Positions 1 through 59,460 of a stretch of 64,000 nt of DNA are shown here, piece by piece; position 1 is the first letter of the stretch, and each line of letters opens with the position of its first letter. Position numbers and translations under genes: made by a program. Under the pieces are notes generated by a model. It was not told the origin of the DNA, did no database searches, and saw nothing but the letters and a program-made list of their open reading frames with translations. The stretch lies in the IMG/VR virus record IMGVR_UViG_3300028840_008160, positions 1 to 64,000 of that record, one strand, 5' to 3'.

Positions 1-1209
1 TCAGTTTTACAAAGAAGCGTGCCACCATTTGAAGCAGTTTATATTTCAGATACACCCGTAGTTGATCCGTTAAGTACTGTAGCTTTTGGTCAGACATTTG
101 GTCCTATGCCTGCGTGGGATAGTGCTACTCTATCTGATTTTAACGTGTTAGCGGGATACGGCGTTGGTGCTCCTGGAAGCTGGGCGACAACAACGGCACC
201 AAATTGGGCTTCAACATATCCAAAAACCGGTACCATTGGTGGAACGTCTGTAGAAATCCTTGCTAAAATTGATATGGATGGTGCTGCTTACGCGGTAGTA
301 GTACCTGATGGAGCTGCAGCTCCTACATCACAACAAGTAAAAGATGGCGAAGATAGTACAGGAACGCCTGTTGCTGCTGGTTTTGCTAATTCAGTAGCTT
401 TAACTGCTGATGTTGAAAGTAATATGTTTGTGACAAATTTAACATCAGAGACTGCTTATGATGTTTATGTCGTAGCAGAATCATCAACACTACAAGATAA
501 TCCTGTTAAGTTAGACATTACAACTAGCGACATTACAGATCCTATTAATGCAGCTGGTTATCCTAAGCTTAGTACAATTGAAGAAACATTAGCTGGTATT
601 TTGGCTAAGATAAATGAAGCTGGTACAGGATATTTTGTTGTTGTTCCTAAAGATGCAGATGCTCCTTCACCTGCACAAGTAAAAGCTGGGCAAGATAGCA
701 CAGGTACAGCAGTTAATACAGGATTTTATGGAAGTGGGATACTTTCAGCTAATGTTGAAACAGAATTAATAGCGACTAATTTGTCAATTGGTACACAGTA
801 TGATATGTACTTTATTGCTGAGGATTCCTCGCTTAATCTGCAAGATGTTGTGTCAATGGTACAAGTTTCAACATTATCTAAAATTATCAACCAGATTAAC
901 ATACCATCTTCATATGTAGGATCATATGTGACGATTAAGTTGAATAGATTGATTGTTACTACTGATAGAGTTTATCCTACAGATTTTACATTGGTGTCTG
1001 TTGTTGGTAGTGGTTATGAAGTTGTAACATCTGCTGCTACTGAGTTTAAAATTAAAATTCTAGCTGCTGTTTCTAGTCAATGTAAAGTATCGATTAAAGT
1101 TAATGATGGTGTTAATACAAGTAATGTTTATGAATACATTATTAATGTTGTTCCGGGAAATGAGAGACTTAAGAGCAAGCCTGTTGGATATACTATTTTA
1201 ACTAAGTAA
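1..1209 (+). CDS. Virion/surface protein with two tandem ~115-aa beta-rich repeats (5'-truncated by the window)
   Basis: Frame is open from base 1. Repeats YPK...ILAKIDMDGAAYAVVVPDGAAAPTSQQVKDGEDSTG and YPK...ILAKINEAGTGYFVVVPKDADAPSPAQVKAGQDSTG; Ig-like tail ending KVNDGVNTS. Confidence 0.55.
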   Translation, partial: SVLQRSVPPFEAVYISDTPVVDPLSTVAFGQTFGPMPAWDSATLSDFNVLAGYGVGAPGSWATTTAPNWASTYPKTGTIGGTSVEILAKIDMDGAAYAVVVPDGAAAPTSQQVKDGEDSTGTPVAAGFANSVALTADVESNMFVTNLTSETAYDVYVVAESSTLQDNPVKLDITTSDITDPINAAGYPKLSTIEETLAGILAKINEAGTGYFVVVPKDADAPSPAQVKAGQDSTGTAVNTGFYGSGILSANVETELIATNLSIGTQYDMYFIAEDSSLNLQDVVSMVQVSTLSKIINQINIPSSYVGSYVTIKLNRLIVTTDRVYPTDFTLVSVVGSGYEVVTSAATEFKIKILAAVSSQCKVSIKVNDGVNTSNVYEYIINVVPGNERLKSKPVGYTILTK

Positions 1210-1297
1210 CAGCAACAAGTTGCATTTTTGGATGTCATGGTTTTTAATCGTAAGTTTCGTTTTGCGCTTTTTATGTACAAAATCAAAAATTTTTTCT

Positions 1298-1447
1298 CGC
1301 GTGCGCGCGTGCGCGCAAATCTACTCTATTTACTCTACTGTAATAGCCGCGCGCGCTACGCGCGCGTAAAGTAGAAAGAAAAGTAAGAGAGCAGTATCAG
1401 CGCTTTGGTATTAGTAGTACGCGCGCGAGTACGCGTGCGCGAGAGCG
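1298..1447. repeat. Cluster of alternating CG/purine-pyrimidine tracts and palindromes in an intergenic region
   Basis: cgcgtgcgcgcgtgcgcgca at 1298-1317, cgcgcgcgc at 1348-1356, perfect palindrome tacgcgcgcgta at 1357-1368, tacgcgcgcg at 1418-1427, tacgcgtgcgcg at 1430-1441, all in an otherwise AT-rich genome. Confidence 0.85.
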
Positions 1448-1561
1448 AAAGCATCTGACAACACTAGCTTTGAGTATGAGCGATCATCAATTTAATAACT
1501 ATGATTTTAATACTTCGACAATAGAAGTGATTATTTTCTTTTTAAGCTTATAGAGGAGATT

Positions 1562-1882
1562 ATGACGTTAAAAAATAGTCCAAACTTTTTTGCTGCTGAG
1601 TTTCTAACAAATATTATTATAATGTTTTACGAGCGCATAAAACCAGCTCGCTTAGCAAAGGAAAATAAAGAATTAGTATGTATTGAATTAAGCAGTTCTT
1701 TGGTCGCTTGTTATTATGCATGTCTTCGGGGTCAAGCGACTAGAGCTAATTGTCCAAATGTAACAGAAGACATAAATAAATTTGTTAGACAACTGTATGA
1801 TGTTGCTGATTTGCACACGTATAATATAGTGCCTAATTTTGTTGTGATGATTGATGAGAAAGTAGATGAGGCAGTCGAATGA
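1562..1882 (+). CDS. Hypothetical protein
   Basis: Strong RBS (gaggag) before ATG; stop overlaps next start (ATGA). Confidence 0.6.
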   Translation: MTLKNSPNFFAAEFLTNIIIMFYERIKPARLAKENKELVCIELSSSLVACYYACLRGQATRANCPNVTEDINKFVRQLYDVADLHTYNIVPNFVVMIDEKVDEAVE

Positions 1883-2064
1883 TTTTGACAATAGCTTATG
1901 ATGTAGTACTTGGCATTGATACAAGAGTTTTTAAACTAGTTAAAAATGAGACTATTGAAGTCCTTGAAGAAGTAGATAAATATAGTAGAGTAAAAGTATT
2001 GATACAGCAACAAGAAGTTTTGATTAACAAGCAGATGTTAGACCGAATTGTTAATAGTCATTAA
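1879..2064 (+). CDS. Small hypothetical protein
   Basis: ATGA coupling to upstream ORF; 61 aa. Confidence 0.5.
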   Translation: MILTIAYDVVLGIDTRVFKLVKNETIEVLEEVDKYSRVKVLIQQQEVLINKQMLDRIVNSH

Positions 2065-2834
2065 ATTCTTTTTGAATATTCGCAATTTCTACAAATAACT
2101 GGTTCATCCTCTGATTTTACACGCCTTAAAAAGTCATTATATTCTATTGTGTTGAATAAGTCGTTGTAATAACGATCAAATATGTTGCCGATTTTGTGCT
2201 TAAGACTAAAGTCGCAACAACATATATAGACATCTCCATTTGGTAGGCATACGTTGTTTACGTATTTGAATGGTAGTTGATGAACTTTTTGACATGTTAT
2301 TGGGCCAGACTTATAATTGACATTGAAATTTAAATTGTTTGCTCGTGAAATAATTGGTAATTTTAGGACTGATAAATCATTAAAGTCATTAGTTGGCTGA
2401 CCGAGTGACACGAAAATAATTTTGGAGTTGTGTTTGCTGATTAATTCTATGTTTTGCAATATGACAGTTGAGTCAGTTATGAAATGATTGTTGTCTGGCA
2501 AATGCACACATATTGTAGCTTTTGACCATATAGATAAATCTATATCTTCTAGTTTTATCGATAATGTAGTATAAATCATACAAGGTCTATTGTCGCGAAT
2601 AGTTTTATCTATCATTTTAAAACTGTCTGGATTTTGTAATGGTTCACAAAAGCCAGCAAAGTCAATTTGCACATGTTTAGGTAAATTGTTTAGTATTTGA
2701 CAAAAGTTAGTAAATGATAAAGTTGGTTGTCCTTTGTACACTTTGATAAGATTGTTTTGTGGACAACAGCTGCAGTGGTTTATGCATGGGATTGCAGTTG
2801 TTATTTCAAAAGTAGGATAATTTGCAAATGTCAT
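2061..2834 (-). CDS. Radical SAM protein with SPASM/twitch domain
   Basis: CxxxCxxC (CINHCSCC), GFCEPL, C-terminal LPNGDVYICCCD...IGNI...CRNC. Confidence 0.8.
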   Translation of the reverse strand: MTFANYPTFEITTAIPCINHCSCCPQNNLIKVYKGQPTLSFTNFCQILNNLPKHVQIDFAGFCEPLQNPDSFKMIDKTIRDNRPCMIYTTLSIKLEDIDLSIWSKATICVHLPDNNHFITDSTVILQNIELISKHNSKIIFVSLGQPTNDFNDLSVLKLPIISRANNLNFNVNYKSGPITCQKVHQLPFKYVNNVCLPNGDVYICCCDFSLKHKIGNIFDRYYNDLFNTIEYNDFLRRVKSEDEPVICRNCEYSKRI

Positions 2835-3307
2835 AGTATGAATCCATCATACGGTTCTGTTGTTCTAATAAATTCTTCAGTAAATTCTTTTCCTCGCTCT
2901 TGTAGAACTTCTTTAATCATCGAGATATAATAAGATGGTATAATTCCATTTTGTGACGGGTTTATTGTAACAAAGGCAAAAATTCGATCACTCTTACCAA
3001 TTTCTAAGGTTGTCATGACATTTGTTGTAACATTTTTGAAAGCGTAACATTTTCCAACCATTTCTGATTTGCATAAAGGCGCTATATCATCTTTTGATAT
3101 TTTGAAGATGATGCCGTTGATATGCGTTGATATTTGAGATTCAATGCCTAAAAATAGTTTGCCTTCCCAAACTGTGTTCCATGCACGTTTAAAGTAACAT
3201 AATTTAGCTTGATGAAGGTCTTTATTTTTGTAAGTTTTTTTGAGACCTCTGCCATTAATTCCGGCAATAGATGCTAAAGTACAATACCCAAAAATGTAGT
3301 ACGACAT
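2831..3307 (-). CDS. Gamma-glutamylcyclotransferase-like (GGCT/ChaC/AIG2 fold) protein
   Basis: N-terminal YIFGYCTL resembles YxFxYGSL; INGIIF...LCKSE...Y pattern. Confidence 0.5.
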   Translation of the reverse strand: MSYYIFGYCTLASIAGINGRGLKKTYKNKDLHQAKLCYFKRAWNTVWEGKLFLGIESQISTHINGIIFKISKDDIAPLCKSEMVGKCYAFKNVTTNVMTTLEIGKSDRIFAFVTINPSQNGIIPSYYISMIKEVLQERGKEFTEEFIRTTEPYDGFIL

Positions 3308-3309
3308 AC

Positions 3310-3852
3310 TTATTTGTTGAGAAGTTTTTGAAGTCGTAAAAACATAACTGAAACTTGTGGATCTTTACTTTCTTCTACATTTGATGTTTCAGCCCAAACG
3401 CATGCAGCTTTCTTTTCTAATTCTGAACCGTCACCTGTAGCTTCGCCACGATCTTTGTCTGTAAGATTTATTGTGTATAGATAGTAAACTGTGTCGGCAG
3501 ATTTTGAAGCAAAACTAGTTCCAAGACTGATTAGTTCATTTTTATCAGCTTTGTAACCACCTTCTTCTTTTAGTTCCATTATAGCAGTGTCTCTAGGGTC
3601 GCCGCCTTCAAATCCACCCGTAATTGAACTAATGTATTGATTTAATCCCCAACAAGGTGTGACTTCATTTCTGAGAAGAAGTTCAATACCAGAAGATGTT
3701 AGTCTGTATGGTAGTAAAGCAATGATTTTGCCTTCGCATCTTGATTCATGCGAGAAAAAATATCCATTAACACCATTTTCGGGATCAATCATTTTTTTGA
3801 GAGCAAGAAATGATTTGTCACCTACTTTTCCTTCGCAGATAGTCTCAATCAT
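3310..3852 (-). CDS. Nudix hydrolase
   Basis: Nudix-like box GGFEGGDPRDTAIMELKEEGGY (canonical Arg replaced by Met). Confidence 0.75.
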   Translation of the reverse strand: MIETICEGKVGDKSFLALKKMIDPENGVNGYFFSHESRCEGKIIALLPYRLTSSGIELLLRNEVTPCWGLNQYISSITGGFEGGDPRDTAIMELKEEGGYKADKNELISLGTSFASKSADTVYYLYTINLTDKDRGEATGDGSELEKKAACVWAETSNVEESKDPQVSVMFLRLQKLLNK

Positions 3853-3861
3853 TATGTCCTC

Positions 3862-4131
3862 CTAATATGCATCACTAAAGCCGTCTTTGAATAATTGTGT
3901 AAGAATTTTTGCCACTTGTTGTTCGTCTTTTCCGCTAATTGTTATGTTTATTTTTGCGCCTTTGTTAGCAACTAATGTCATGAGATTCATAATACTTCTA
4001 GCATTAACAGACACGCCGGCATTTTTCATTATAACAGTTGACTTGTAGTTACGCAATGTCTCTACTATTAGGGCCGATGGCCTTGCGTGAAGGCCCAGTT
4101 CGTTTGTGATTTTTAGGGTTATTTGTACCAC
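3862..4131 (-). CDS. ptsH: Phosphocarrier protein HPr
   Basis: GLHARPS with His at position 15 and NARSIM with Ser at position 46; 89 aa; C-terminal SGKDEQQ. Confidence 0.9.
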   Translation of the reverse strand: MVQITLKITNELGLHARPSALIVETLRNYKSTVIMKNAGVSVNARSIMNLMTLVANKGAKINITISGKDEQQVAKILTQLFKDGFSDAY

Positions 4132-4414
4132 TGCGTTTCTCCAGTTTTTTGTATATTTGCATTAGATCATCATCTTGTAAAAAATGATCGCATTGTTCTT
4201 TAATTTTGTGTCGACATTTTTCATGTTTGCAAATTTTACAAACTGATTTGTCCCAATTTCGTCTAAAGTCTTTTGCGAACATTTTTGTCCACGATGTCTC
4301 GTCTTTAGCAATTAAATCAGTTTTAATATGTTTGCTAATAGCGCTGCGTTCTGCTGTGACGAAATTTTTAAAAATAATATCATAAGGAGGAATTTTTCGT
4401 TGGTGTGTTTTCAT
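4049..4414 (-). CDS. Hypothetical protein with a Cys cluster (CKICKHEKC)
   Basis: Strong RBS (aaggagga) upstream; 3' end overlaps the HPr start by about 80 bp. Confidence 0.55.
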   Translation of the reverse strand: MKTHQRKIPPYDIIFKNFVTAERSAISKHIKTDLIAKDETSWTKMFAKDFRRNWDKSVCKICKHEKCRHKIKEQCDHFLQDDDLMQIYKKLEKRSGTNNPKNHKRTGPSRKAIGPNSRDIA

Positions 4415-4439
4415 AGTTGCTCCTCCTTAAAGAGAATAG

Positions 4440-4467
4440 TGGCCTCTACTTTATCAAGTAAAGGCCA
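4440..4467 (-). terminator. Possible terminator hairpin
   Basis: tggcct(ct)act...agta(a)aggcca inverted repeat just downstream of the minus-strand ORF 4473-5177. Confidence 0.35.
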
Positions 4468-4472
4468 ACAAA

Positions 4473-5177
4473 TCAACTGAGTTTTTTAATAACATTAAGT
4501 ATGTCATCTTTAGCGTCTTTAATTTTATCATATCTTGCAACTTCTCGTTTTTCTGGATTGAAAATTGAATAGAAAAAGTCTCGACCATGGACTTGTCTAT
4601 CAATGTACCAATTTATATTATGTGCTGCGTATCGTAAGATTCCATTAATAGTTACAGGTCTTTTCCAGAAAATCTTGTCAGGTATATTTGATGAAAAATT
4701 TATGCCCATATAGTTAAAAATGTCGTCGATTGTATCACATTTTGCTAAATCTATTGATAAGTTAGTAACATCGTCTTTTGTTACAACTTTTTGTGATTGA
4801 TCAATATGTACTAATTCTTTTGGCATAGACTTTTTAGTGACAGTTCGAAACTTTTGTTGACGTTCATGCGCTTCAATACTAGATATCACTTGTTCATACA
4901 CATCAAGAAATTGCTGTACAAAATATTTCTCTTCATCATTATCTGAGTGTTCTATAATACTACGAAGGAAATCAGTCCAGCCTTCATTATTAATAACATT
5001 AATTGTATTGGGTAAGAACACTTTAGCTGAACCGACACGCACTGTTACACCAGAGATCTTTATAAGACCTTTGTTTGCTGCGTCTTGTAACATTTCTCTT
5101 GAACTATTATAGATGGACATAACAATCCTTTTATAGATGTATTCTAATAAGGATATGATCAATGATTTTACATGCAT
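4473..5177 (-). CDS. Hypothetical protein (true start probably 5120, MSIYN)
   Basis: Long ORF; aagga RBS precedes the internal Met. Confidence 0.6.
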   Translation of the reverse strand: MHVKSLIISLLEYIYKRIVMSIYNSSREMLQDAANKGLIKISGVTVRVGSAKVFLPNTINVINNEGWTDFLRSIIEHSDNDEEKYFVQQFLDVYEQVISSIEAHERQQKFRTVTKKSMPKELVHIDQSQKVVTKDDVTNLSIDLAKCDTIDDIFNYMGINFSSNIPDKIFWKRPVTINGILRYAAHNINWYIDRQVHGRDFFYSIFNPEKREVARYDKIKDAKDDILNVIKKLS

Positions 5178-5303
5178 GACAGTGATCCATCTTTGTAATA
5201 TGAATTGATTAATCGTATATGATTGTCTTTTTATTCTCCATCAATATACAATAGATTATGAAATGTTTGTCGATACACCTCTTTGGTGTTGATGATAGTG
5301 AGT

Positions 5304-5340
5304 AGGAGGAGTCAATGAAAATTGGCTCCTCCTTTTTCTT
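5304..5340 (+). terminator. Intrinsic terminator/attenuator-like hairpin upstream of the NAD cluster
   Basis: 13-bp stem aggaggagtcaat / attggctcctcct (one G-U), GAAA loop, followed by a T-run. Confidence 0.65.
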
Positions 5341-5365
5341 TGTTATTTGAAATGATTACAATGAT

Positions 5366-5587
5366 ATGGACACATCAGTTGGAAATCTACGAAAAATGTT
5401 AGAGAGTTTGCCAGATGAGGCAGACATTGTGACTGAAGATTGGGATGGTGCTGCTATTAGAAGAATGAATCATAGCACAAATGAGCCCTTAGCACTGGAA
5501 GAATTGCTTATGGTTCATGATGGTAGACTCTATATTGTCAATAAGCAAGCTACTGAAAACGAATGTCATCGATGGCAACGAGGTTGA
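5366..5587 (+). CDS. Small hypothetical protein
   Basis: 73-aa ORF directly upstream of pncB; VGNLRKMLESLPDEADI resembles common small phage proteins. Confidence 0.55.
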   Translation: MDTSVGNLRKMLESLPDEADIVTEDWDGAAIRRMNHSTNEPLALEELLMVHDGRLYIVNKQATENECHRWQRG

Positions 5588-5589
5588 CT

Positions 5590-6774
5590 ATGCAAGGACC
5601 AATAAGCGCAATCGACAATGATCAGTACAAGTTCTCAATGCAAAATGGTGTTGTGAAGTTGTTTCCTCGCGAAATTGTTCGATACGAGTTTTTTAATCGA
5701 GGCAAACATGAGTTTCCGGATGGATTTGCGAAACTTCTGCGTGAACTAGTAGATATGTATGCTGCTATTACATTTGTCAAAGATGACATCGATTTTTTTA
5801 GAGAAAAAGCTTACTATTTTGATCCTGCATATCATTCGTTTTTACGAGGCTACAGATATGATCCGTCAGAAGTGAAAATCATTCAAGAAGGTTACAATCT
5901 TCAAGTAATTGTGGAGGGCTTATGGCACAAAACAATTCTATGGGAAGTGCCGCTTATGGCATTGATCTGCGAATTGTATTATGAAATGACTAAACAACAA
6001 CCAAAAGACAGAAAAGAACGAGAGCAAATCAACAAAGAGAAAGTTATTGCTCTTACAAAATTGTTAATCAAAGCAGCAGAATTTGGAACAAGACGACGGT
6101 TTTCTTTTATTAATCAAAAAGAGTTTTTAATTGATGCTATAACTTATGGCAATTTTGCTGGACATAAACTTCTTTCTGGAACAAGCAATGTATATTTTGC
6201 ACGTGAACTTGATCTTCTATCAATAGGTACACAAGCTCATGAGTGGTACATGTTTCACGCTGCGAAGTATGGTTTTAGAATGGCTAACTTGCTCGGTATG
6301 GAAAACTGGGTTAAAGTATATAATGGAGATTTGGGAATAGTTCTTCCAGATACATTCACCACTGATGCTTTTCTCAAGTCTTTTAATACAATGTTTGCAA
6401 AGCTGTTCGACGGCAGTAGACAAGATAGTGATTGTCCGTTCGCATACACAGATAAATTTGTCAAACATTATCGTGATTTGAAAATTCCGTCACAACACAA
6501 AACAATTGTTTATTCTGACGGAATAAGCAGTGTTAAAACCGTGAGTGATATCAAGGAATATGCAACAGGAAAAGTGCAAGACGGATATGGTATTGGTACA
6601 TGGTTTACAAACGATGTTGGTCTTAAGCCGATGAATATCGTTATTAAGATGACAGCTGCATTTATAAACGGAGTATGGGTACCTACAATTAAGTTGTCTG
6701 ACGCAGCAACGAAGAATACAGGAGATCAGATTCAAATTGGAATTGCTAAACATGAATTAGGGATAAATGTATGA
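5590..6774 (+). CDS. pncB: Nicotinate phosphoribosyltransferase
   Basis: DNDQYKFSMQ, EFGTRRRFS, GTSN, GTQAHEW (phospho-His motif as in E. coli PncB), DTF, RQDS, GIGT, KLSD. Start placed at ATG 5590 after gagg; the track ORF starts at 5563. Confidence 0.92.
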   Translation: MQGPISAIDNDQYKFSMQNGVVKLFPREIVRYEFFNRGKHEFPDGFAKLLRELVDMYAAITFVKDDIDFFREKAYYFDPAYHSFLRGYRYDPSEVKIIQEGYNLQVIVEGLWHKTILWEVPLMALICELYYEMTKQQPKDRKEREQINKEKVIALTKLLIKAAEFGTRRRFSFINQKEFLIDAITYGNFAGHKLLSGTSNVYFARELDLLSIGTQAHEWYMFHAAKYGFRMANLLGMENWVKVYNGDLGIVLPDTFTTDAFLKSFNTMFAKLFDGSRQDSDCPFAYTDKFVKHYRDLKIPSQHKTIVYSDGISSVKTVSDIKEYATGKVQDGYGIGTWFTNDVGLKPMNIVIKMTAAFINGVWVPTIKLSDAATKNTGDQIQIGIAKHELGINV

Positions 6775-6887
6775 TAGCTTTCATCAGTTTAGTTTTTTTG
6801 TTGATATTATTGACAGACTTGTCAATTACGATAAAGAACATGTAAGAATTAGAATAATAATAGTGGAACAGAATAGGAAAAAAATGT

Positions 6888-7796
6888 ATGGACAACTTGG
6901 TGTATACGACAAAGATTAGTGATAGTGCTTATGCTTATGCAGTAAAGAAAATGCAAAACATTTTTCGTCAGTATTTAATTGATAACAATCGAAAAGCTGT
7001 TGTTATTGGAATGTCGGGTGGTATTGATAGTGCTCTAACTGCAGCTTTGGCTGGGCAAGTATGTGCAGAATTAGAAATACCGCTTGTTGGTAGAAGTCTA
7101 CCAATAATGACGAATAAACCTGATGAAGTAGAACGTGCCGCAAGAGCTGGTAAAATATTTTGTTCTAATTTTGGTGAAAAAGATTTAACTAGTGCATATA
7201 CTGCTTTACACGAATTGATGGATGACATTGATGCTAGCAGTGATGAGCAATTAACTTTGACAGTAAAGATTCGAGAAGGTAATATTAAAGCGCGAACAAG
7301 AATGATATATCTTTATGATCTTGCTAGAAAAAATGATGGATTGGTTTTGTCAACTGATAACTATACAGAATTAATGCTCGGTTTCTGGACACTTCATGGT
7401 GATGTAGGCGATTTTGGATTACTTCAGAATATTTGGAAAACAGAAGTATATGAAATGGCAAGATTTTTATGTCGCGCAGGATTAGATGATGATGCTATTC
7501 AAATACTAAAAGACACTATTACTGCTGTTCCGACAGATGGTTTAGGAATTACAAATAGTGATTTAGATCAGCTTGGAGCAGGCAGCTATGAAGAGGTTGA
7601 CAAAATTTTGATGACATATTTATCTGGTTCAAGAAAAGAATATATGAATCATCCAGTTATCATAAGACATTTGACATCTGTTTATAAGAGAGCGAATCCT
7701 GTTAATATAGCTAGAAAAGATATTCTTCCTTCTGTTTATAAGAGAGCGAATCCTGTTAATATAGCTAGAAAAGATATTCTTCCTTTAACAGCATGA
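6888..7796 (+). CDS. nadE: NH3-dependent NAD+ synthetase
   Basis: PP-loop SGGIDS, GNIKARTRM, TDNYTE, GFWTLHGDVGD, KTEV, PTDGL; no glutaminase domain. Confidence 0.92.
   Translation: MDNLVYTTKISDSAYAYAVKKMQNIFRQYLIDNNRKAVVIGMSGGIDSALTAALAGQVCAELEIPLVGRSLPIMTNKPDEVERAARAGKIFCSNFGEKDLTSAYTALHELMDDIDASSDEQLTLTVKIREGNIKARTRMIYLYDLARKNDGLVLSTDNYTELMLGFWTLHGDVGDFGLLQNIWKTEVYEMARFLCRAGLDDDAIQILKDTITAVPTDGLGITNSDLDQLGAGSYEEVDKILMTYLSGSRKEYMNHPVIIRHLTSVYKRANPVNIARKDILPSVYKRANPVNIARKDILPLTA
7677..7784 (+). repeat. Perfect 54-bp in-frame tandem duplication in the nadE 3' end
   Basis: tctgtttataagagagcgaatcctgttaatatagctagaaaagatattcttcct at 7677-7730 and 7731-7784 (SVYKRANPVNIARKDILP x2). Confidence 0.95.
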
Positions 7797-7802
7797 GATT
7801 TT

Positions 7803-8552
7803 ATGTGGATAAAGAATCAAGCAATCATCGTCGGAACTGATCACATTCATACTAAGACTAATCGTCAAGATTATGTATTAACTTATAGTGATAGAGATAT
7901 TACATGCGGCGTTGTGTGTGACGGTTGCAGTTCTGGACAATTTTCTGAATTTGGTGCATGTTTTATTGCAAATTTAGTAATAAAATTATTGAAAACTAAT
8001 CGAGAAGCAACTGCTGAATTGTTGACAGTTGAAATGATGATTGAAATAAAACGTGCTATAGACAGCGTTCTTTTTTTACTTCATGATTATTCAACAACAT
8101 TGCCTATAGATATAGCACATTTTATTGAACATCATTTTTTATCGACATTTGTTTTTTGCATGATAGCTGGTGATAGAATTATCATAGGTCGTTGCGGTGA
8201 TGGCTTGACGATTGTAAATGGTATAGCTGACATTGCTGATCAGAAGAATGCGCCGCATTATATTGCGTATAACAATGTGCCGAAATTTTTGTTATCAACG
8301 TCAGATTTGAATGGCATTGAAATACAGGTATTAAATGAAGTAGAGGTGAACAGCATTGTTATTGGTACAGATGGATTGGTGCCGCTTCTAGAAGCTAATG
8401 AAGGTCATGAATTGTTTGGAACTGAGAAGAGACAGTTACAACGGAAATTTAATGTATGGCAAAATAAAAGACAGTTATTTCATGATGATGTTTCATGCGT
8501 TGTTTTTGAAAAGGTGAAGAATGAAGATAGTATTATGCGGGCAAACGATTGA
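7803..8552 (+). CDS. PP2C-family protein phosphatase (TerY-P/YegK-like)
   Basis: G.DH...NRQD, VVCDGCSS, GDG, GTDGL and DDVS metal-binding motifs. Confidence 0.8.
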   Translation: MWIKNQAIIVGTDHIHTKTNRQDYVLTYSDRDITCGVVCDGCSSGQFSEFGACFIANLVIKLLKTNREATAELLTVEMMIEIKRAIDSVLFLLHDYSTTLPIDIAHFIEHHFLSTFVFCMIAGDRIIIGRCGDGLTIVNGIADIADQKNAPHYIAYNNVPKFLLSTSDLNGIEIQVLNEVEVNSIVIGTDGLVPLLEANEGHELFGTEKRQLQRKFNVWQNKRQLFHDDVSCVVFEKVKNEDSIMRAND

Positions 8553-17162: not shown

Positions 17163-18356
17163 GTGATGATAACGTCTAGAAATATATTAGGATTTTCTGT
17201 TGCCCCTAACATGTGTAGAGTAATGGAGGCAAATGGATTTTATGCATCAATAATGAAGTCAGAAAAACGAAAAGATGATGATGGCGGATTGCCGTCCGGA
17301 ATGCCTATACCTGTTATGCCAGTTGATTTTTTGAAAGATAGACCAGATTTTTGGGTTGGCGGCATTGGTTCATTTTGCTGCCCTGTTGAGTCTGACTGGG
17401 GTCTGTGGTTTAATTGGACGATGAATATATCTAATATAGCTGTATTGTCGTCAGTAAAAGGAATGAATCCAATTACTGGTCAACGTGTTAATGGGTTAGA
17501 ATTGGAACAATATAAAGAACAATGCCCTATTCATAAAGTGAAATTTCAGCATGGTAAATTTTGTCCTAAATGTAATTTCAAATGGCCAGATCAAAATTAC
17601 ATTACAGAGCCAAATCTATTATATTGGGACGGGTTTAGAACAGCCGATGGTCAAGTTAGACAATTTTATTTTACAGAAGATCTTGCAAAATCTGTCCCTG
17701 AATTGGTCATTGGTAAAGATGATACAGTACCAGCATTTGGGTTTTGTTTTTATATGCCGAAGAAAGTAGAGTCTATAAATTATGAAGGTGGTAAGCGATT
17801 AAAGAATAAATTTCTAGAAATAGAAAAAATGACTGTTTCTTCTGGAAGTAGTTTGAGCATGGGTATGGTGAGAGGAATGTCAATACCTGGCGTTTATACT
17901 AAAATGGTCGATGATACTTATAAACATTCATCAAGTGTATATTATGCATCTTTAGCACCAATTTGTATGGATATGTGTAATAATTCTTATGTCGGATCAA
18001 CTGTAGCTGATGGGGCATCTACAAAGTTTTCGCTCACTTCATCTGCTGATATCAATGCGTTTAATGTAAGTGATGTTAAATTGAGTTTAGAGACGAGTGA
18101 ACTAGCAGATGAGTTAATACTTAGAGAAAGAAGTGAAAATGCTGAAGTTGGAATTGGAGCAGGTGCGAAACTTAAACAATCGCTTATGCAAGATGTAAGA
18201 ACTGTTGATTCATGGCAAAATAAACCTGCAGGAGTGATTAGAGTATATTTTGTTTTTAGAGAGCAATTTGAACGATATGTTAGTGCTGGATTGAATAATT
18301 TAGCTGGTCATAAAGAAGGTTATTTAAGTGATCTTCCTGTAGGAGGTAACAAATGA
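17163..18356 (+). CDS. Conserved-looking hypothetical protein with Zn ribbon
   Basis: CPIH...FCPKC; QNY...WDGF...GQVRQF and EVGIGAGAKLKQ...D...W motifs. Confidence 0.6.
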   Translation: MMITSRNILGFSVAPNMCRVMEANGFYASIMKSEKRKDDDGGLPSGMPIPVMPVDFLKDRPDFWVGGIGSFCCPVESDWGLWFNWTMNISNIAVLSSVKGMNPITGQRVNGLELEQYKEQCPIHKVKFQHGKFCPKCNFKWPDQNYITEPNLLYWDGFRTADGQVRQFYFTEDLAKSVPELVIGKDDTVPAFGFCFYMPKKVESINYEGGKRLKNKFLEIEKMTVSSGSSLSMGMVRGMSIPGVYTKMVDDTYKHSSSVYYASLAPICMDMCNNSYVGSTVADGASTKFSLTSSADINAFNVSDVKLSLETSELADELILRERSENAEVGIGAGAKLKQSLMQDVRTVDSWQNKPAGVIRVYFVFREQFERYVSAGLNNLAGHKEGYLSDLPVGGNK

Positions 18357-32770: not shown

Positions 32771-35700
32771 ATGGCTGATGATGACAATGACATTGTAAAT
32801 GAAGATGAAGACGAAGATATTGTATGTGAAAACGAAGTTGTAAGTGAAGAAGGACAATTTGATGTCAAATCGCACGAAGTGTTGCCGAAGATGTATTTGG
32901 CTTATGCGCTAAGTGCAATTAAAGACAGATCATTACCTGATATACGTGACGGACTAAAACCTGTCGCGAGACGTATTTTGTTCGGAATGCATGAAATGAG
33001 TTTGACTCATTCTAAGCCAACTAGAAAAAGCGCAAGAGTCGTTGGTGAAGTCATGGGCAAATATCATCCTCACGGAGATGGGTGTTGGAGAGGCTCTGCC
33101 AACGTTCTTGAACTCAATGGTAAAATTCATCGTTTAAAAGACCTTGTAGGCAAGCAGATTTGGGTATTGGCTCATGATACAGAGAACAACAAGCCGGTCC
33201 CAGCAATTGCTCATTCATTTAGAATTACAAAGTTTGTCGATGAATTGTATCGTGTGACATTTTGGAATGGTGAAAAGATCGAATTGACAGACAATCATGA
33301 ATTGGAAAAATTATCAGGTGAATGGTCCAGGACTGATGCTTTGAATGTTGGTGATATAATCACTAATGGAATTATCACTAACAACGAATATCCTAAATTT
33401 AGAAGTTCAAATGAACGTATGTCAATAGGAAAGAAACTTCATCATATTGTTGGTGAACATATTCATGGTGAAGCTGAAATTTATCATCATAAAGACGAGA
33501 ATACGAAGAATAATTTGCCTGACAATATTGAACCGGTGACAAAGATCGCTCATGAAAAGCTTCATAAGAATTATGAAAAAGGTCTACGAAAAGGTAATGA
33601 AACTATGTTTCATGGTATCGATGAATTTCGTGAAGCTACAAGAAAGAAAAACTCTGAGATTATTAAAGCAGTGAATCAAAAACATTATCTTTTTAAAGCA
33701 ATTAAGATTCTTAAGATGATGATTGAAGATGATGTAGAACTTACAGAAGAAGTTTATAATAACTATCGAGTAAAAGTATATAATGGTACAACTCTAGAAC
33801 GACTTAAGATAAATGGCCATACTTTTGATGAGGTTGCTGGATATGCCAAGTCAAAAGAGAAACTTAGACTAATTGATACTTCATTAGCAAAAGGTCACAT
33901 TGAAAGTCTTAAAGTTGAAGAAAATAATGCTGATGAACATGTTTCAAGACAAAGTAATGATTCAAGAAAAAAAGGTCATTTACTCTATACGTCTTCAATA
34001 GTAGTTAGTGCATGCCTTGAAAATTATGGTTTAAATTTTAATATCAAAGACTATGATGATATTAGATGCGATTTGTGTGAAACAGATGACAATAATTTTT
34101 ATCCAAAATTTGAAACATTGACAAAATGGTTTGGGATAACTACAATCAATCAATTATTGGATTTAATGTCTCAACGAAATTTAATGATAATTAAGAAGAT
34201 TGAGACATTCAATGTTGATCATGAGCCTGTATATGATTTTACTGTAGATAAATATGAAAATATGTATATGCCTGTTGGCACGAATGAAAGAAACGAAACG
34301 AAACTAATTGTTGCTCATAATTCAATCTATGGTGCAGCGGTGAGGTTGGCACAACCTTTTACTACACGTTATCCGCTTATCATTGGTCAAGGAAATTTTG
34401 GGTCAGTTGAAGATAAACCGGCTGCAATGAGATACACAGAAATGAAAATGTCAGCAATATCAGATATGGTTGTTGCTGATATTGATAAAGCGACAGTTGA
34501 TTTTATGCCCAATTTTGATGGCACACTTAATGAACCCAAAGTTTTGCCGACAAGACTACCGTTGTTTTTATTGAATGGTTCTGTTGGTATTGCTGTTGGT
34601 ATGGCAACTTCTGCGCCGCCTCATAATTTGACGGAAATTATCGATGCTATGTTGACTTTCATTGATAATGAAGACGTCTCAATCTCTGAATTGATGCAAT
34701 ATTTAAAAGGACCTGATTTTCCATCTGGTGCATATATGTTTGACAACGGAATTCGTCAAATATATGAAACAGGTCGAGGGTCTGTAACTATAAGAGCGAA
34801 AGCTGAAATTGTTGATAACGGTAAAAGACAGAACATCATCATTACTGAATTGCCGTATCAATTAGACAAGTCTAAGTTAATCACTAGAATTGCTGATCTT
34901 TATAAGAAGAAAGAGAAGATTGAAGGTATTGATGGCATATCAGATATCAGAGATGAAAGTGATAAGCATGGTACGAGACTAGTAGTTGAATTACGACGCG
35001 GTGTTAGAGCCAAGGCTGTTTTAAACACATTGTTTCGGCGTACTGAATTACAAACAAAACAATCTTTTTTGATGCGAGCGTTGATCGACAATGTTCCAAA
35101 ACTTGTAACGCTTAAAGAAATTTTTGGTCATTTTGTCAATCATAGAAAAGATGTTATCACGAGACGAACTGAGTTTGAATTGAATCAAGCAGAAAAGAAA
35201 GCTCATATATTGCGCGGATATTTAGTAGTTTTTGATAATTTGGATGCAATTCTTGAAGATGTCAAAACTTCTAAGTCAACTGAGATGACATATAAACGTT
35301 TGCAGAAATATAAATTATCTGATGAACAAATCAAGGCAATTTTGGATTTACGCGTGCAACGTCTCGCTCAATTTGAGCGCGAAGCTATTGTGACTGAACA
35401 TAGTGAACTAATGACTAAGATTCACGGATTGAAGCAGTTACTAGATTCGGAAGTTTTAGTATTAGAAAAAATCAAAGAGGAATTGGCAGAAATTAGACAA
35501 CAATTTGGTGATGCTCGTAAAACTAAAATTATCAAAACCAGATCTAGATCAAACTCTGATGATGACGATGATAATAAAGAAGAAAGTTTAGATACAAGTG
35601 ATGAAACAATTGATGAGATTGAGGAGATTCAGGAGGAAGACGTTGTTGTTACTGTAACTCATAATGGATTGGTTAAACGGACGCCGGTGTCAGAATATCG

Positions 35701-36613
35701 TGTGCAGAACGTACGTGGTAAGGGTTTGATTGGAGTTGATGTTAAAGAAGAAGATTATGTTGAAAAAGTATTTCAATTATCAACGCATGATTATACATTA
35801 GTTTTTACTAATAAGGGTCATTGTTATAAAATGAATGTATTTGAGATACCGTCATTAGGCAGAACAGCTGCAGGAAGTTCAATACTCAATGTTCTTAACC
35901 TTAATGAAGATGAAATTGTTGCTAGTGTAGTACCAATTACTAATTTGCAGGACAAAATGTTTTTGATGGTTACAAGAAAAGGTCAAGTCAAAAAATTGAA
36001 AGCTGAAAAGTTGCAACGCCCACGAGCTAAAGGTACAAAAGTTGTTGGACTTGATGACAACGACGTTCTTATTGATGTTAAACTTATAGATCAGCCACAT
36101 TTGGATGCTTTGTTAGTGACGAGAAAAGGTATTTCAATACGATTTCCTGAAAGTGCTGTAAGAGCATCCGGTAAAAGTGGTTCAGGCGTTAGGGCAATCA
36201 AATTAGCTGATGATGATTGTATTGTTTCGGTAAATATGATATCTGAAGCTGACAATGAATGTTTTGTGATGCTAGTTACTGAACGAGGTTATTCTAAAAA
36301 GACTATATTACGCAAGTTTAGAACTCAACGTCGAGGTGGTCGCGGGATCATTTGTATGGATGCTAACACAACTGTTGGCAAAATTGTTTCGGCTGGTATT
36401 GTGTTAGACGAGAAAGAACAATTCATTGTTATGACAAGTCAAGGCATGCTTATACGATTGAAATCGGCTCAAATAAGAACATTAGGACGAAATACTCAAG
36501 GTAGTCGAATACAAAAACTAAAAATGACTGATTCAGTAGCTGCAGTTGCATATTTAGGAATTGTTGAAGAAAACGAATCTGACTCTGAACAATCTGAAGT
36601 CGAGGATGAATAA
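32771..36613 (+). CDS. gyrA: DNA gyrase subunit A, intein-containing
   Basis: RDGLKPV, YHPHGD, GQGNFGS, AAMRYTE catalytic Tyr, GIAVGMAT, beta-pinwheel CTD with QNVRGKG and QRRGGRG, acidic tail. Confidence 0.93.
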   Translation: MADDDNDIVNEDEDEDIVCENEVVSEEGQFDVKSHEVLPKMYLAYALSAIKDRSLPDIRDGLKPVARRILFGMHEMSLTHSKPTRKSARVVGEVMGKYHPHGDGCWRGSANVLELNGKIHRLKDLVGKQIWVLAHDTENNKPVPAIAHSFRITKFVDELYRVTFWNGEKIELTDNHELEKLSGEWSRTDALNVGDIITNGIITNNEYPKFRSSNERMSIGKKLHHIVGEHIHGEAEIYHHKDENTKNNLPDNIEPVTKIAHEKLHKNYEKGLRKGNETMFHGIDEFREATRKKNSEIIKAVNQKHYLFKAIKILKMMIEDDVELTEEVYNNYRVKVYNGTTLERLKINGHTFDEVAGYAKSKEKLRLIDTSLAKGHIESLKVEENNADEHVSRQSNDSRKKGHLLYTSSIVVSACLENYGLNFNIKDYDDIRCDLCETDDNNFYPKFETLTKWFGITTINQLLDLMSQRNLMIIKKIETFNVDHEPVYDFTVDKYENMYMPVGTNERNETKLIVAHNSIYGAAVRLAQPFTTRYPLIIGQGNFGSVEDKPAAMRYTEMKMSAISDMVVADIDKATVDFMPNFDGTLNEPKVLPTRLPLFLLNGSVGIAVGMATSAPPHNLTEIIDAMLTFIDNEDVSISELMQYLKGPDFPSGAYMFDNGIRQIYETGRGSVTIRAKAEIVDNGKRQNIIITELPYQLDKSKLITRIADLYKKKEKIEGIDGISDIRDESDKHGTRLVVELRRGVRAKAVLNTLFRRTELQTKQSFLMRALIDNVPKLVTLKEIFGHFVNHRKDVITRRTEFELNQAEKKAHILRGYLVVFDNLDAILEDVKTSKSTEMTYKRLQKYKLSDEQIKAILDLRVQRLAQFEREAIVTEHSELMTKIHGLKQLLDSEVLVLEKIKEELAEIRQQFGDARKTKIIKTRSRSNSDDDDDNKEESLDTSDETIDEIEEIQEEDVVVTVTHNGLVKRTPVSEYRVQNVRGKGLIGVDVKEEDYVEKVFQLSTHDYTLVFTNKGHCYKMNVFEIPSLGRTAAGSSILNVLNLNEDEIVASVVPITNLQDKMFLMVTRKGQVKKLKAEKLQRPRAKGTKVVGLDDNDVLIDVKLIDQPHLDALLVTRKGISIRFPESAVRASGKSGSGVRAIKLADDDCIVSVNMISEADNECFVMLVTERGYSKKTILRKFRTQRRGGRGIICMDANTTVGKIVSAGIVLDEKEQFIVMTSQGMLIRLKSAQIRTLGRNTQGSRIQKLKMTDSVAAVAYLGIVEENESDSEQSEVEDE
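33083..34321 (+). mobile_element. Intein (413 aa) with HNH homing endonuclease in gyrA
   Basis: Begins CWRGSA after HPHGDG; block B LTDNHE; block F VYDFTVDKYEN; ends IVAHN followed by Ser; internal HHKDENTKNNLPDNIE...H. Removing it restores HPHGDGSIYGAAVRLAQ. Confidence 0.92.
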
Positions 36614-40733: not shown

Positions 40734-41138
40734 ATGCCTACGTATGATTTTATTTGTAATGAATGCGAACAAGAATATGAAGAAAATCGACCTGTTGGTG
40801 ATTATGATTCAAAATGTCCAGTTTGCAACAGCACAAATGTTAAAAAATTAATTTCTGCACCAAATGTTATACTTAGTGGTTCGACGCCGGATTCGATTAT
40901 TGGGCGAGATGCTGAGCAACGATGGGCACAATACACTGAAAGAAAAAAACAACGAGATAAAAACAATTTTGGTAATGCATCAAGTAAGGAAGTAGAAATT
41001 AAAAATCAACAACGAATTGGTCGACTTGTAGATAGACAACATAAAGCTTATGATGTTTTAGACAAAGCAAAGAAAAAAGCAGGTGTGACTAAACGAGAGG
41101 AAATAAGTTATTTGTTGAAAGGGCAAAACAATGTATAA
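40734..41138 (+). CDS. FmdB-family zinc-ribbon protein (second copy)
   Basis: MPTYDFICNEC...CPVCNS...KKLISAP. Confidence 0.78.
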   Translation: MPTYDFICNECEQEYEENRPVGDYDSKCPVCNSTNVKKLISAPNVILSGSTPDSIIGRDAEQRWAQYTERKKQRDKNNFGNASSKEVEIKNQQRIGRLVDRQHKAYDVLDKAKKKAGVTKREEISYLLKGQNNV

Positions 41139-58978: not shown

Positions 58979-59412
58979 TGGTGAAATTCATCAATGATGT
59001 TAGTATACATGAATATGAAGTGACAATAGATGAACTGGGCACGCTAGCTAATGTCTGTAATGATTCATTTAAGCCAGTAAATGTACTAACTAATAGAACA
59101 AATACGATTAGAGGCTATTATTGTTGTGATGATAAAGTAATGATAGCATGTGTTAATGGCACAATTAAGTTGGTATTGTTTGATTTAAATCAGAAATCGT
59201 CAACTGAGCATGATATAAATGAATTTTTTATGGGTGAGGCTAAACCATTATTAATAACTATACCAAAGAATGTAGCATTTTCTTGGCAATGCATAAGCAG
59301 TATTGATTCAATTGTGGTCACGACGATGAAAAATTATAATTGCGTGATTAATCCGTATAGTGAAGATAAGCAGATCGAACAATTAGGTTTTGCAATTCCA
59401 TATACATTCTAA
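58975..59412 (+). CDS. Degenerate dTDP-4-dehydrorhamnose 3,5-epimerase-like cupin (RmlC-like)
   Basis: DELG, IRGYY (cf. RGLH), GTIKLVLFD, ITIPKNVAFSW (cf. IPPGVAHGF). Confidence 0.55.
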   Translation: MMVKFINDVSIHEYEVTIDELGTLANVCNDSFKPVNVLTNRTNTIRGYYCCDDKVMIACVNGTIKLVLFDLNQKSSTEHDINEFFMGEAKPLLITIPKNVAFSWQCISSIDSIVVTTMKNYNCVINPYSEDKQIEQLGFAIPYTF

Positions 59413-59460
59413 TATTTTGATTTTGCAGTAATTCTGAATCAGACTTGATAGGAGATTGCA

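What the first reader, a model, noticed from the sequence alone, without database searches (positions are those of the whole stretch)
1298..1447. CG-alternating island with loose dyad symmetry in an AT-rich genome (candidate origin, packaging site or Z-DNA element)
Seen: five (CG)n-type tracts, up to 20 bp of strict purine-pyrimidine alternation. They form three blocks around a central perfect palindrome tacgcgcgcgta. The left spacer is pyrimidine-rich (ctactctatttactctact), the right spacer is purine-rich (agtagaaagaaaagtaagagag), and AT-rich DNA flanks both sides. I saw nothing similar elsewhere in the window. It lies at the boundary between a structural gene and the accessory region. Established: (CG)n tracts form Z-DNA or cruciforms under negative supercoiling. 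Inference: a cis-acting site, possibly supercoiling-sensitive in a phage that encodes its own gyrase and TopA.
Basis: partly seen in the sequence, partly recalled or inferred. Interest (0 to 1): 0.6.

Follow-up and report, generated by a model that had tools for sequence, protein, structure and literature searches.

The report
Conserved CG-alternating element in huge phages
The CG-rich island is real, occurs once in this 330-kb AT-rich phage genome, and belongs to a previously unnamed family of ~160-bp non-coding elements kept in at least five related huge phages; its function is still unknown, and it does not behave like a main replication origin or packaging site.

Summary
Window 1296-1447 holds five alternating purine-pyrimidine CG tracts (20, 9, 12, 11 and 13 bp) in three blocks. 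It has 23 CpG per 150 nt against a genome mean of 4. Half of all CGCGCG/GCGCGC hexamers of the 329.8-kb genome lie here. The sequence is identical in four independent assemblies, so it is not an artefact.

The new result is that it is a conserved element. Homologues lie in four other phage-G-like contigs (L096, L099, L100, L106). All share the same layout: CG block, pyrimidine-rich spacer with a CTCTAT(T/A)T box (invariant CTCTATTT in four of five), central CG hairpin, more variable spacer (purine-rich and longer in four of five), CG block. In window versus L096, 56 of 57 nt are identical while flanking genes are saturated at third codon positions. CG alternation itself is conserved (95-98% of G/C-G/C steps in four copies, 82% in L096; genome 56%).

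It is single-copy. It sits in a variable accessory region near a NUDIX/HPr gene cluster, in either orientation relative to transcription. It is missing from several close relatives. There is no Rfam match, no terminator tail and no uniquely supported fold.

Best reading, with low confidence: an accessory DNA-level structural or recognition module (Z-DNA- and cruciform-prone). An RNA hairpin, a selfish GC cluster and an auxiliary origin remain open.

The parts
1..1209 (+). 3' part of a 977-aa Ig/Fn3-like repeat protein gene (probable fibre or surface protein). The contig starts inside it.
   Evidence: Open-ended ORF. The full gene is seen in L010:2715-5648. There is a weak Fn3 match in Pfam. 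Homologues carry Ig_3, I-set and RCC1 domains.
1296..1317 (.). 5' CG block (S1). It contains a 20-bp alternating purine-pyrimidine tract at 1298-1317, made of two 8-nt CGTGCGCG units.
   Evidence: Identical in L096. Replaced by other alternating CG tracts in L099, L100 and L106.
1318..1346 (+). Pyrimidine-rich spacer carrying the box CTCTATTT (1324-1331), followed by TAATAG next to the central block.
   Evidence: CTCTATTT is invariant in four homologues and reads CTCTATAT in L106. It occurs only once on the + strand of the whole genome.
1347..1368 (.). Central CG block. It can form a hairpin of 7-8 CG pairs around a TAC loop (1349-1366). It overlaps the perfect 12-bp palindrome TACGCGCGCGTA (1357-1368).
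   Evidence: (I19). Every homologue has a different but self-complementary CG-rich centre.
1369..1416 (+). Purine-rich spacer with 2-3 loose direct repeats of a GTAGA/TAGAG-like motif (complement of the pyrimidine box) and a small internal hairpin. This is the most variable part.
   Evidence: Its length is 35-72 nt in the homologues.
1417..1447 (.). 3' CG block (S2). It holds two alternating tracts, 1417-1427 and 1429-1441, then GAGAGCG.
   Evidence: (D1, I1). The homologous alignment with L096 ends about 1455.
1562..1882 (+). 106-aa ORF downstream. It has no homologue outside this phage and is not conserved next to the element in other phages.
2831..4030 (-). Conserved accessory genes with which the element travels: 158-aa protein, NUDIX-like 180-aa protein and HPr-like 55-aa protein.
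   Evidence: The element lies 50 nt to 1.9 kb beyond the 3' end of the NUDIX-like gene in all five phages.

Best explanation
The island is one copy of a lineage-specific, conserved, non-coding module of about 155-170 bp, found in a subclade of phage-G-like huge phages.

I think it most likely works on the DNA itself. Three strictly alternating CG blocks can each flip to left-handed Z-DNA or extrude as hairpins when the DNA is strongly underwound. They bracket an asymmetric A/T-rich core whose conserved CTCTAT(T/A)T box, together with the TACGCGCG-type palindromes, would be read by a protein. The module would then act as a local structural or recognition site, such as a supercoil sink or insulator, or an assembly site for a nucleoprotein complex. 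It sits at a cassette junction in the variable accessory region.

It is accessory. It is not the phage's universal origin or packaging signal.

Shown:
- conservation;
- single copy;
- conserved alternation;
- conserved polarity of the core;
- independence from the direction of flanking genes;
- patchy distribution.

Inferred:
- that the DNA rather than a transcript is the active form;
- that a protein binds it;
- that structural transitions occur in vivo.
For: 1. Five distinct homologues share one architecture: window 1292-1452, L096:10487-10660, L099:10985-11146, L100:10841-11012 and L106:4036-4200 (minus strand).
2. Selection is strong. 56 of 57 nt are identical between window and L096, while third codon positions of the flanking genes are only 49-62% identical. 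P is at most 1.5e-6 even against 75% background identity.
3. What is kept in the GC blocks is alternation, not a particular sequence. CG+GC make up 95-98% of G/C-G/C steps in four copies and 82% in L096, against 56% genome-wide. Ordinary RNA stems do not need this. Z-DNA and register-free self-complementarity do.
4. Orientation relative to local transcription is not kept. The window copy is in sense between two + genes. L096 and L106 are antisense between co-directional genes. L099 and L100 lie in a divergent promoter region.
5. There is no U-tail terminator and no Rfam family, even at E of 10 or less. Rfam does find tmRNA, tRNAs and group I introns in other GC-rich gaps of the same genome.
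6. TACGCGCG-type palindromes are otherwise almost absent, yet they recur as isolated sites in relatives (G002 twice, G001 once). That fits a recognised DNA word.
7. The estimated B-Z transition at sigma about -0.036 to -0.049 is within reach of gyrase-driven or transcription-driven supercoiling. The phage encodes gyrase and TopA.
Against: - No experiment or read data bear on structure or binding.
- No candidate binding protein was identified.
- No Z-alpha domain was found, though that control search was silent everywhere, so the result is uninformative.
- The predicted hairpin is not more stable than dinucleotide-preserving shuffles (z -0.9 to -1.6).
- The pairing register is ambiguous. Sliding partners by 2 columns keeps 58-66% of pairs.
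- An RNA role cannot be excluded. The purine spacer changes mostly by A/G swaps opposite a U-rich invariant strand, as G-U wobble would allow.
- In L100 the element must lie within or upstream of the 5' leader of the neighbouring STAS-like gene.
- Several close relatives do without it.
Confidence: 0.33

Rival explanations
1. It acts as RNA. Either it is a long GC-clamped hairpin within mRNAs, serving as a processing, stabilising or roadblock element that works in either orientation because it is nearly palindromic. Or it is a small non-coding RNA gene with its own promoter.
For: - All five copies fold into a long imperfect hairpin with a GC-rich base and tip.
- 84% of cells pair in a consensus structure, with a covariation score above 499 of 500 shuffles.
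- The U-rich 5' spacer is invariant while the purine 3' spacer drifts by A/G changes.
- L096 has a reasonable sigma-70-like -35/-10 just upstream (read).
- In L100 the element must be in or before the leader of the STAS-like gene.
Against: - Orientation relative to flanking transcription differs among phages.
- There is no conserved promoter or terminator.
- There is no Rfam relative.
- The plus and minus strands fold about equally well, and which strand is favoured varies.
- Strict CG alternation gives promiscuous registers, which functional RNAs usually avoid.
- The shuffle control is known to be exceeded by related sequences without any structure.
Confidence: 0.25
2. It is a selfish or semi-mobile palindromic GC cluster, or a recombination joint. 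It would be comparable to mitochondrial GC clusters or to the T4-type promoter-terminator cassettes (PeSLs) at which gene cassettes are exchanged. It would have little function for the phage beyond promoting shuffling.
For: - It is patchy among close relatives, present in 5 of 8 syntenic loci.
- It lies in a hyperplastic region where different cargo genes are inserted on either side of it. The window has 106-aa, 61-aa and SPASM genes on its right. L096 has a glycosyltransferase and three other genes on its left.
- Orientation flips in L099 and L100.
- The near-identity of the left half between otherwise diverged phages could reflect recent exchange.
- For comparison, PeSLs (PMC4122927) and mobile GC clusters (PMC4478555) are described.
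Against: - It is single-copy in the one nearly whole genome available.
- All five copies lie beside the same gene cluster rather than scattered, though they were found through those neighbours.
- No target-site duplication was seen.
- No copy was confirmed among 72 pattern hits in 185,579 prokaryotic species genomes, and none in IMG/VR.
- The conserved asymmetric core points to function.
Confidence: 0.2
3. It is an auxiliary replication origin. It would resemble T4 origins or yeast mitochondrial ori sequences (three GC clusters in AT-rich DNA). A transcript through the purine-rich spacer would form a stable R-loop that primes DNA synthesis, with the CG blocks absorbing supercoils.
For: - It is single-copy.
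- Iteron-like direct repeats in the purine spacer, plus an inverted copy in the pyrimidine box.
- GC blocks separated by A/T-rich DNA.
- Its polarity is independent of neighbouring genes.
- It lies in the only part of the window where gene orientation departs from the dominant strand.
- Individual T4 origins are dispensable and not conserved among relatives (my knowledge), so a patchy distribution is tolerable.
Against: - No initiator gene is consistently nearby.
- GC skew is monotonic and gives no origin signal.
- Relatives with 84-91% identical capsid protein lack it.
- No promoter has been shown.
Confidence: 0.12
4. It is a packaging (pac/cos) site, a genome terminus or a telomere-resolution site.
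For: - Its size and layout recall the P1 pac site, where clusters of short palindromes flank a centre (my knowledge).
- The palindrome TACGCGCGCGTA resembles the CG core I recall for N15-type telRL sites.
- Phage G is reported to have fixed ends (bioRxiv 10.1101/2024.12.16.628780).
Against: - It lies 41 kb from TerL.
- It sits in the middle of the 326-kb ENA contig, not at an end. Contig breaks nearby are explained by repeats inside the Ig-repeat gene.
- The perfect palindrome is only 12 bp and is not conserved in the homologues.
- There is no ResT/TelK-type protelomerase match.
- There is no DNA methyltransferase match.
- It is absent from close relatives.
Confidence: 0.05

Closest known systems
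Palindromic GC clusters and ori/rep sequences of yeast mitochondrial DNA (PMC4478555; the ori architecture is from my knowledge)
   Same: Short GC-rich palindromic blocks embedded in very AT-rich DNA. The ori type has three GC clusters separated by A/T stretches. Both are patchy among relatives and sit in intergenic positions.
   Different: Those are multi-copy and demonstrably proliferate. This element is single-copy and linked to one gene cluster. Its GC blocks are strictly alternating CG, not G- and C-runs. There is no sequence relationship.
PeSL promoter-terminator cassettes of T4-like phages (PMC2839356, PMC4122927)
   Same: Small conserved non-coding modules with a stem-loop, located in hyperplastic regions of large myoviruses at the borders of swapped ORFan cassettes.
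   Different: PeSLs are about 50-60 nt, occur many times per genome, and consist of a terminator plus an early promoter. Here there is one copy of about 160 bp with no recognisable terminator tail or shared promoter.
REP/BIME elements of enterobacteria (gyrase-binding GC-rich extragenic palindromes; PMC2817692 and PMC12306157 listed, details from my knowledge)
   Same: Arrays of GC-rich imperfect palindromes in intergenic DNA that can act at both DNA and RNA level. Gyrase binding is documented for BIMEs, and this phage carries its own gyrase.
   Different: REPs are host-chromosomal, occur in hundreds of copies and are not CG-alternating. No copy of this element was confirmed among the pattern hits in prokaryotic genomes.
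Supercoil-extruded hairpin promoters of phage N4 (PMC4496689)
   Same: A GC-rich short inverted repeat with a 3-nt loop whose extrusion depends on gyrase-generated negative supercoiling. The window's centre is 7-8 CG pairs around TAC.
   Different: N4 promoters are 5-7-bp stems with specific loop bases read by the virion RNA polymerase. No T7/N4-type polymerase domain was found here (control silent). The loop and stem sequence are not conserved among the five homologues.
Classical (CG)n Z-DNA-forming inserts
   Same: Alternating CG/TG tracts of 9-20 bp, the sequence class with the lowest B-to-Z cost.
   Different: Those are synthetic or incidental. A naturally conserved, multi-block CG-alternating module with an asymmetric core in a phage has, to my knowledge and in my literature searches, not been described.

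Membership tests
Any Rfam RNA family | Match to a curated covariance model at or above its gathering score | tested here: not met
   There were no matches in the window at gathering thresholds. On the element in the window and in L099, only sub-threshold and mutually inconsistent matches appeared at E of 10 or less. As a positive control, tmRNA, tRNAs and group I introns are found elsewhere in the same genome.
Intrinsic (Rho-independent) terminator | GC-rich hairpin followed directly by a U/T run | tested here: not met
   The scan of 1-8000 finds three terminator-like sites, none in 1210-1561. No T-run follows the central or outer stem on either strand. In L099 and L100 the element lies between divergent genes.
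Z-DNA-forming sequence | Alternating purine-pyrimidine tract rich in CG, about 10 bp or more | tested here: met
   There are five tracts of 9-20 bp. The alternation is conserved in all homologues.
Z-DNA-forming sequence | Actual B-to-Z transition at attainable superhelical density | not testable with these tools
   Only a crude energy estimate is available: critical sigma -0.036 to -0.049, with parameters recalled from the literature.
Mobile palindromic GC cluster / MITE-like repeat | Multiple dispersed copies in a genome | tested here: not met
   There is one copy in 329.8 kb by BLAST, nhmmer and covariance model.
Mobile palindromic GC cluster / MITE-like repeat | Patchy presence among close relatives | tested here: met
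   It is present in 5 and absent in 3 of 8 distinct syntenic loci. It is absent from whole G001 and G002.
PeSL cassette (T4-like phages) | Stem-loop terminator plus early promoter, repeated at many cassette borders | tested here: not met
   The element is single-copy, and no terminator tail or shared promoter was found. Only the location at cassette borders in a variable region matches.
Protelomerase target (telRL type) | Long, nearly perfect palindrome of tens of bp next to a protelomerase gene | tested here: not met
   The perfect palindrome is 12 bp and is not conserved. There is no ResT/TelK catalytic domain in the genome held (the genome is about 67% complete by CheckV).
N4-type hairpin promoter | Conserved 5-7-bp stem and 3-nt loop recognised by a phage single-subunit RNA polymerase | tested here: inconclusive
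   The window's centre fits the geometry. The loop and stem differ in L096, L099 and L100. No PF00940 match was found, but the control search also found nothing anywhere.
Replication origin | Coincidence with a GC-skew turning point or a neighbouring initiator gene, and conservation among relatives | tested here: not met
   The cumulative skew is monotonic. No initiator-like neighbour is present. The element is absent from close relatives. Origin activity itself is not testable here.
pac/cos site | Molecule ends at the site, with proximity to terminase genes | tested here: inconclusive
   The element lies 41 kb from TerL and is internal in one long contig.

The most novel reading that the evidence does not exclude
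A subclade of phage-G-like huge phages, which carry their own gyrase and topoisomerase I, keeps a dedicated supercoil-responsive DNA switch. It is a module of three Z-DNA- or cruciform-forming CG blocks around a protein-recognised core. Its structural transition controls a local process, such as firing of an R-loop type auxiliary origin, insulation of divergent or convergent transcription units, or site-specific recombination of accessory gene cassettes. It would be the first naturally selected Z-DNA-type cis element described in a bacteriophage.
Probability: 0.15. Interest if true: 0.8.

Novelty: new variant of a known kind. Interest (0 to 1): 0.5.

Why it matters
Strictly alternating CG tracts are the textbook Z-DNA sequence. 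Naturally selected examples with a defined role in bacteria or phages are almost unknown. Here the alternation itself is conserved across diverged phages while the exact sequences turn over. These genomes are 65% A+T and encode their own gyrase and topoisomerase I. That gives a compact, clonable, about 160-bp natural test object for two questions. Are non-B DNA structures used as cis signals by viruses? What defines cassette junctions in the hypervariable regions of huge phages? If it turns out to be an RNA, it is a new phage non-coding RNA family. If it is selfish, it is the first GC-cluster-like element reported in phages. Either way, it is a useful marker for this uncultivated phage lineage.

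Tried and rejected
- **Assembly artefact or chance:** rejected. Four identical assemblies exist, plus four diverged homologues.
- **DNA similarity in GenBank phages:** nothing by megablast or blastn.
- **Exact central palindrome in IMG/VR:** nine chance hits, in GC-rich contigs or in tiny 2-7-kb contigs of other virus types. I set these aside and did not study them.
- **Further patterns in IMG/VR:** three searches found nothing.
- **JGI metagenome scan:** only the same phage again.
- **GTDB genome scan:** 72 hits, about the number I expected by chance. No confident nhmmer match (best E 0.026).
- **Flanking-protein searches in IMG/VR:** failed.
- **Synteny search in MCP relatives:** only domain-level matches.
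- **Reads:** No terminus, depth or expression data were obtained.
- **Methylation-controlled site (P1-pac-like):** no C5 or N4/N6 methyltransferase domain in the genome held.
- **Protelomerase site:** no TelK/ResT domain.
- **N4-like promoter and Z-alpha reader:** no matches, but those controls were silent, so the result is uninformative.
- **Gene-specific leader:** rejected. The downstream genes are unrelated between the window and L099/L100.
- **A unique RNA or DNA fold:** not established.
- **GC-skew origin mapping:** uninformative.
- **Weak covariance-model hit in G005** (E 0.09; CG blocks but no core box) **and isolated TACGCGCG palindromes in G001 and G002:** noted, but not accepted as family members.

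Full report
**What the genome is.** The window is the first 64 kb of a 329.8-kb IMG/VR virus record. The genome is 34.9% G+C with a strong G>C bias on the + strand. It is a huge phage related to Bacillus phage G. The major capsid protein (52601-53470) is 47% identical to phage G gp27 and 84-94% identical to uncultivated relatives. Large terminase, portal and prohead protease genes lie at 42-50 kb. GyrB, an intein-containing GyrA and TopA lie at 30.8-38.6 kb. The genome carries 56 tRNA genes. IMG/VR's 'provirus' label reflects trimming of 5.9 kb from a 335,667-bp contig. The DNA upstream of window position 1, seen in L010, is missing from the genome held.

**The observation.**
- The alternating purine-pyrimidine tracts are 1298-1317 (20 bp), 1348-1356, 1357-1368 (the palindrome TACGCGCGCGTA), 1417-1427 and 1429-1441.
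- The island fills the middle of a 352-nt gap. On one side is the stop of a 977-aa Ig/Fn3-like repeat protein gene (1209). On the other is a 106-aa ORFan (1562).
- It is the most CpG-dense 150 nt of the genome: 23 CpG against a mean of 3.96 (sd 2.16).
- It holds 6 of 11 GCGCGC, 7 of 14 CGCGCG and all TACGCGCG words.
- No second copy exists by BLAST, nhmmer or covariance model.
- The other GC-rich intergenic gaps of the genome are tRNAs, a tmRNA and group I introns.
- The sequence is 100% identical in four assemblies from different data sets. Nearby contig breaks fall in the internally repetitive Ig-repeat gene, not at the island.

**It is a conserved element family.** DNA searches found nothing, so I went through the neighbouring proteins.
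- A homologue of the Ig-repeat protein led to L096.
- Homologues of the nearby NUDIX-like protein led to L099, L100 and L106/L107.
- Each locus contains one CG island: L096:10487-10660, L099:10985-11146, L100:10841-11012, and L106:4036-4200 on the opposite strand.
- All align with the window element. An nhmmer profile scores each at E of 1e-29 or better.
- The shared plan is:
  1. a 5' CG block;
  2. a pyrimidine-rich spacer carrying CTCTATTT (CTCTATAT in L106), followed 16-17 nt later by (T/A)A(A/G)-CCG;
  3. a central CG-rich self-complementary block;
  4. a variable spacer, purine-rich and two to three times longer than the pyrimidine spacer in four of the five copies (short and not purine-rich in L106), with loose direct repeats of a GTAGA/TAGAG-like motif;
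  5. a 3' CG block.
- Between the window and L096, the left 57 nt differ at one position. The adjacent genes are 58-80% identical in protein and only 49-62% identical at third codon positions.
- The sequences of the CG blocks differ between subgroups, but strict alternation is kept. CG+GC account for 95-98% of G/C-G/C steps in four copies and 82% in L096. The genome-wide figure is 56%.

**Context.**
- In all five phages the element lies 50 nt to 1.9 kb beyond the 3' end of the NUDIX-like gene, in a region where different cargo genes come and go.
- The window has the 106-aa and 61-aa ORFs and a SPASM radical-SAM gene between the element and the 158-aa/NUDIX/HPr genes. L096 instead has a glycosyltransferase and three other genes between the Ig-repeat gene and the element.
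- Orientation relative to the flanking genes varies:
  - sense between two + genes in the window;
  - antisense between co-directional genes in L096 and L106;
  - inside a divergent intergenic region in L099 and L100.
- The genes downstream of the element are unrelated between the window and L099/L100.
- The element is absent from syntenic loci L098, L102/L103 and L105.
- It is also absent from the complete sequences of the two closest long relatives: G001 (MCP 91%) and G002 (84%, 98% complete). Those two relatives also lack the NUDIX-like gene.
- The copies were found through their neighbours, so linkage to this locus is partly ascertainment.

**Structure.**
- Every copy can fold, as RNA or as single-stranded DNA, into a long imperfect hairpin with a GC-rich base and tip.
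- For the window copy, the only one tested this way, the fold is no better than dinucleotide-preserving shuffles (z -0.9 to -1.6).
- The two strands fold about equally well.
- RNAalifold prefers a different pairing, in which the outer blocks pair with the centre.
- On that consensus 84% of cells pair. Sliding partners by two columns still leaves 58-66% paired, as expected for a dinucleotide repeat.
- Self-complementarity is therefore conserved, but no single fold is established.

**Specific ideas tested.**
- Terminator: no T-tail, and the divergent contexts rule it out.
- Known RNA family: none.
- Main origin or pac site: absent in close relatives, far from TerL, internal in a long contig, and the GC skew is monotonic.
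- Telomere-resolution site: the palindrome is only 12 bp and unconserved, and there is no TelK/ResT domain.
- Methylation-gated site: no methyltransferase domains.
- N4-type hairpin promoter: the geometry fits in the window only, and no single-subunit polymerase was found.
- Multi-copy mobile repeat: single-copy, and not confirmed in prokaryotic genomes or IMG/VR.

**Interpretation.**
- A non-palindromic core is kept nearly unchanged.
- The GC blocks are kept alternating rather than merely GC-rich.
- The element is indifferent to the direction of neighbouring transcription.
- TACGCGCG-type words recur as rare isolated sites in relatives.

Together these points make a DNA-level structural or recognition module the best single reading. 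The CG blocks would undergo B-Z or cruciform transitions at sigma about -0.04 to -0.05 (parameters from memory). Such levels are reached behind RNA polymerase or with active gyrase. A protein would read the core. I give this 0.33. An RNA hairpin or small RNA (0.25), a selfish GC cluster or recombination joint (0.20), an auxiliary R-loop-type origin (0.12) and a terminus or pac site (0.05) remain open.

**Limits.**
- No read-level evidence could be obtained.
- There are only five homologues, which fall into three subgroups.
- Only one carrier genome is near-complete.
- Comparisons with yeast mitochondrial ori, the P1 pac site and the N15 telRL core rest on my memory. The papers read here did not print those sequences.

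Noticed in passing
window 32771-36613: The phage gyrase A gene (1280 aa) carries an intein. An Intein_splicing domain spans residues 117-498, ahead of the topoisomerase IV/GyrA domain.
   Followed up: no
genome (G000) 144.9-175 kb, outside the window: ARAGORN finds 56 tRNA/tmRNA genes clustered in about 30 kb. This is an unusually large set even for a huge phage.
   Followed up: partly
G000:C1:177241-177851 (L185:442-1052) and G000:C1:145744-145926 (L186:445-627): A phage-encoded tmRNA (Rfam 102.7 bits) is immediately followed by a group I intron match (94 bits). A second group I intron match lies among tRNA genes.
   Followed up: partly
window 7677-7785: Two tandem 55-bp copies lie at the 3' end of the NAD synthase gene. 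The short Logan contig ends here, probably because of this repeat.
   Followed up: no
window 1-1209 and G000 about 274296-274750: The Ig-repeat protein gene has internal domain repeats. A paralogue elsewhere in the genome is 82% identical in nucleotides over 457 bp, and there is a 602-aa paralogous protein, P0002. Several assemblies break inside this gene.
   Followed up: partly
G002 17486-17508 and 34200-34390; G001 147503-147516; G005 59344-59590 (L182:1500-1745): Relatives that lack the element still carry rare isolated CG-alternating palindromes in apparently non-coding DNA. TACGCGCGTA occurs twice in G002 and TACGCGCGCGCA once in G001. G005 has a looser CG-block pair about 190 bp apart. 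These may be degenerate or distant cousins of the element.
   Followed up: partly
window 41131-42399: A 423-aa protein has weak matches to phage RNA polymerase sigma factor families, just upstream of the terminase gene.
   Followed up: no
window 2061-8552: An accessory metabolic cluster sits around the element. It holds a SPASM-domain radical-SAM protein, a NUDIX-like protein, an HPr-like protein, nicotinate phosphoribosyltransferase, NAD synthase and a PP2C phosphatase. Parts of it are syntenic in relatives.
   Followed up: partly
G000 102195-102821 and 243506-243843: Two further long intergenic gaps, 43-47% G+C, have no tRNA and no Rfam match. They remain unexplained.
   Followed up: partly
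whole record G000: IMG/VR classes the record as a provirus at 67% completeness. The trimmed 5.9 kb appears to be ordinary phage DNA: small ORFs plus the 5' part of the Ig-repeat gene seen in L010. The provirus call is therefore probably an artefact.
   Followed up: partly
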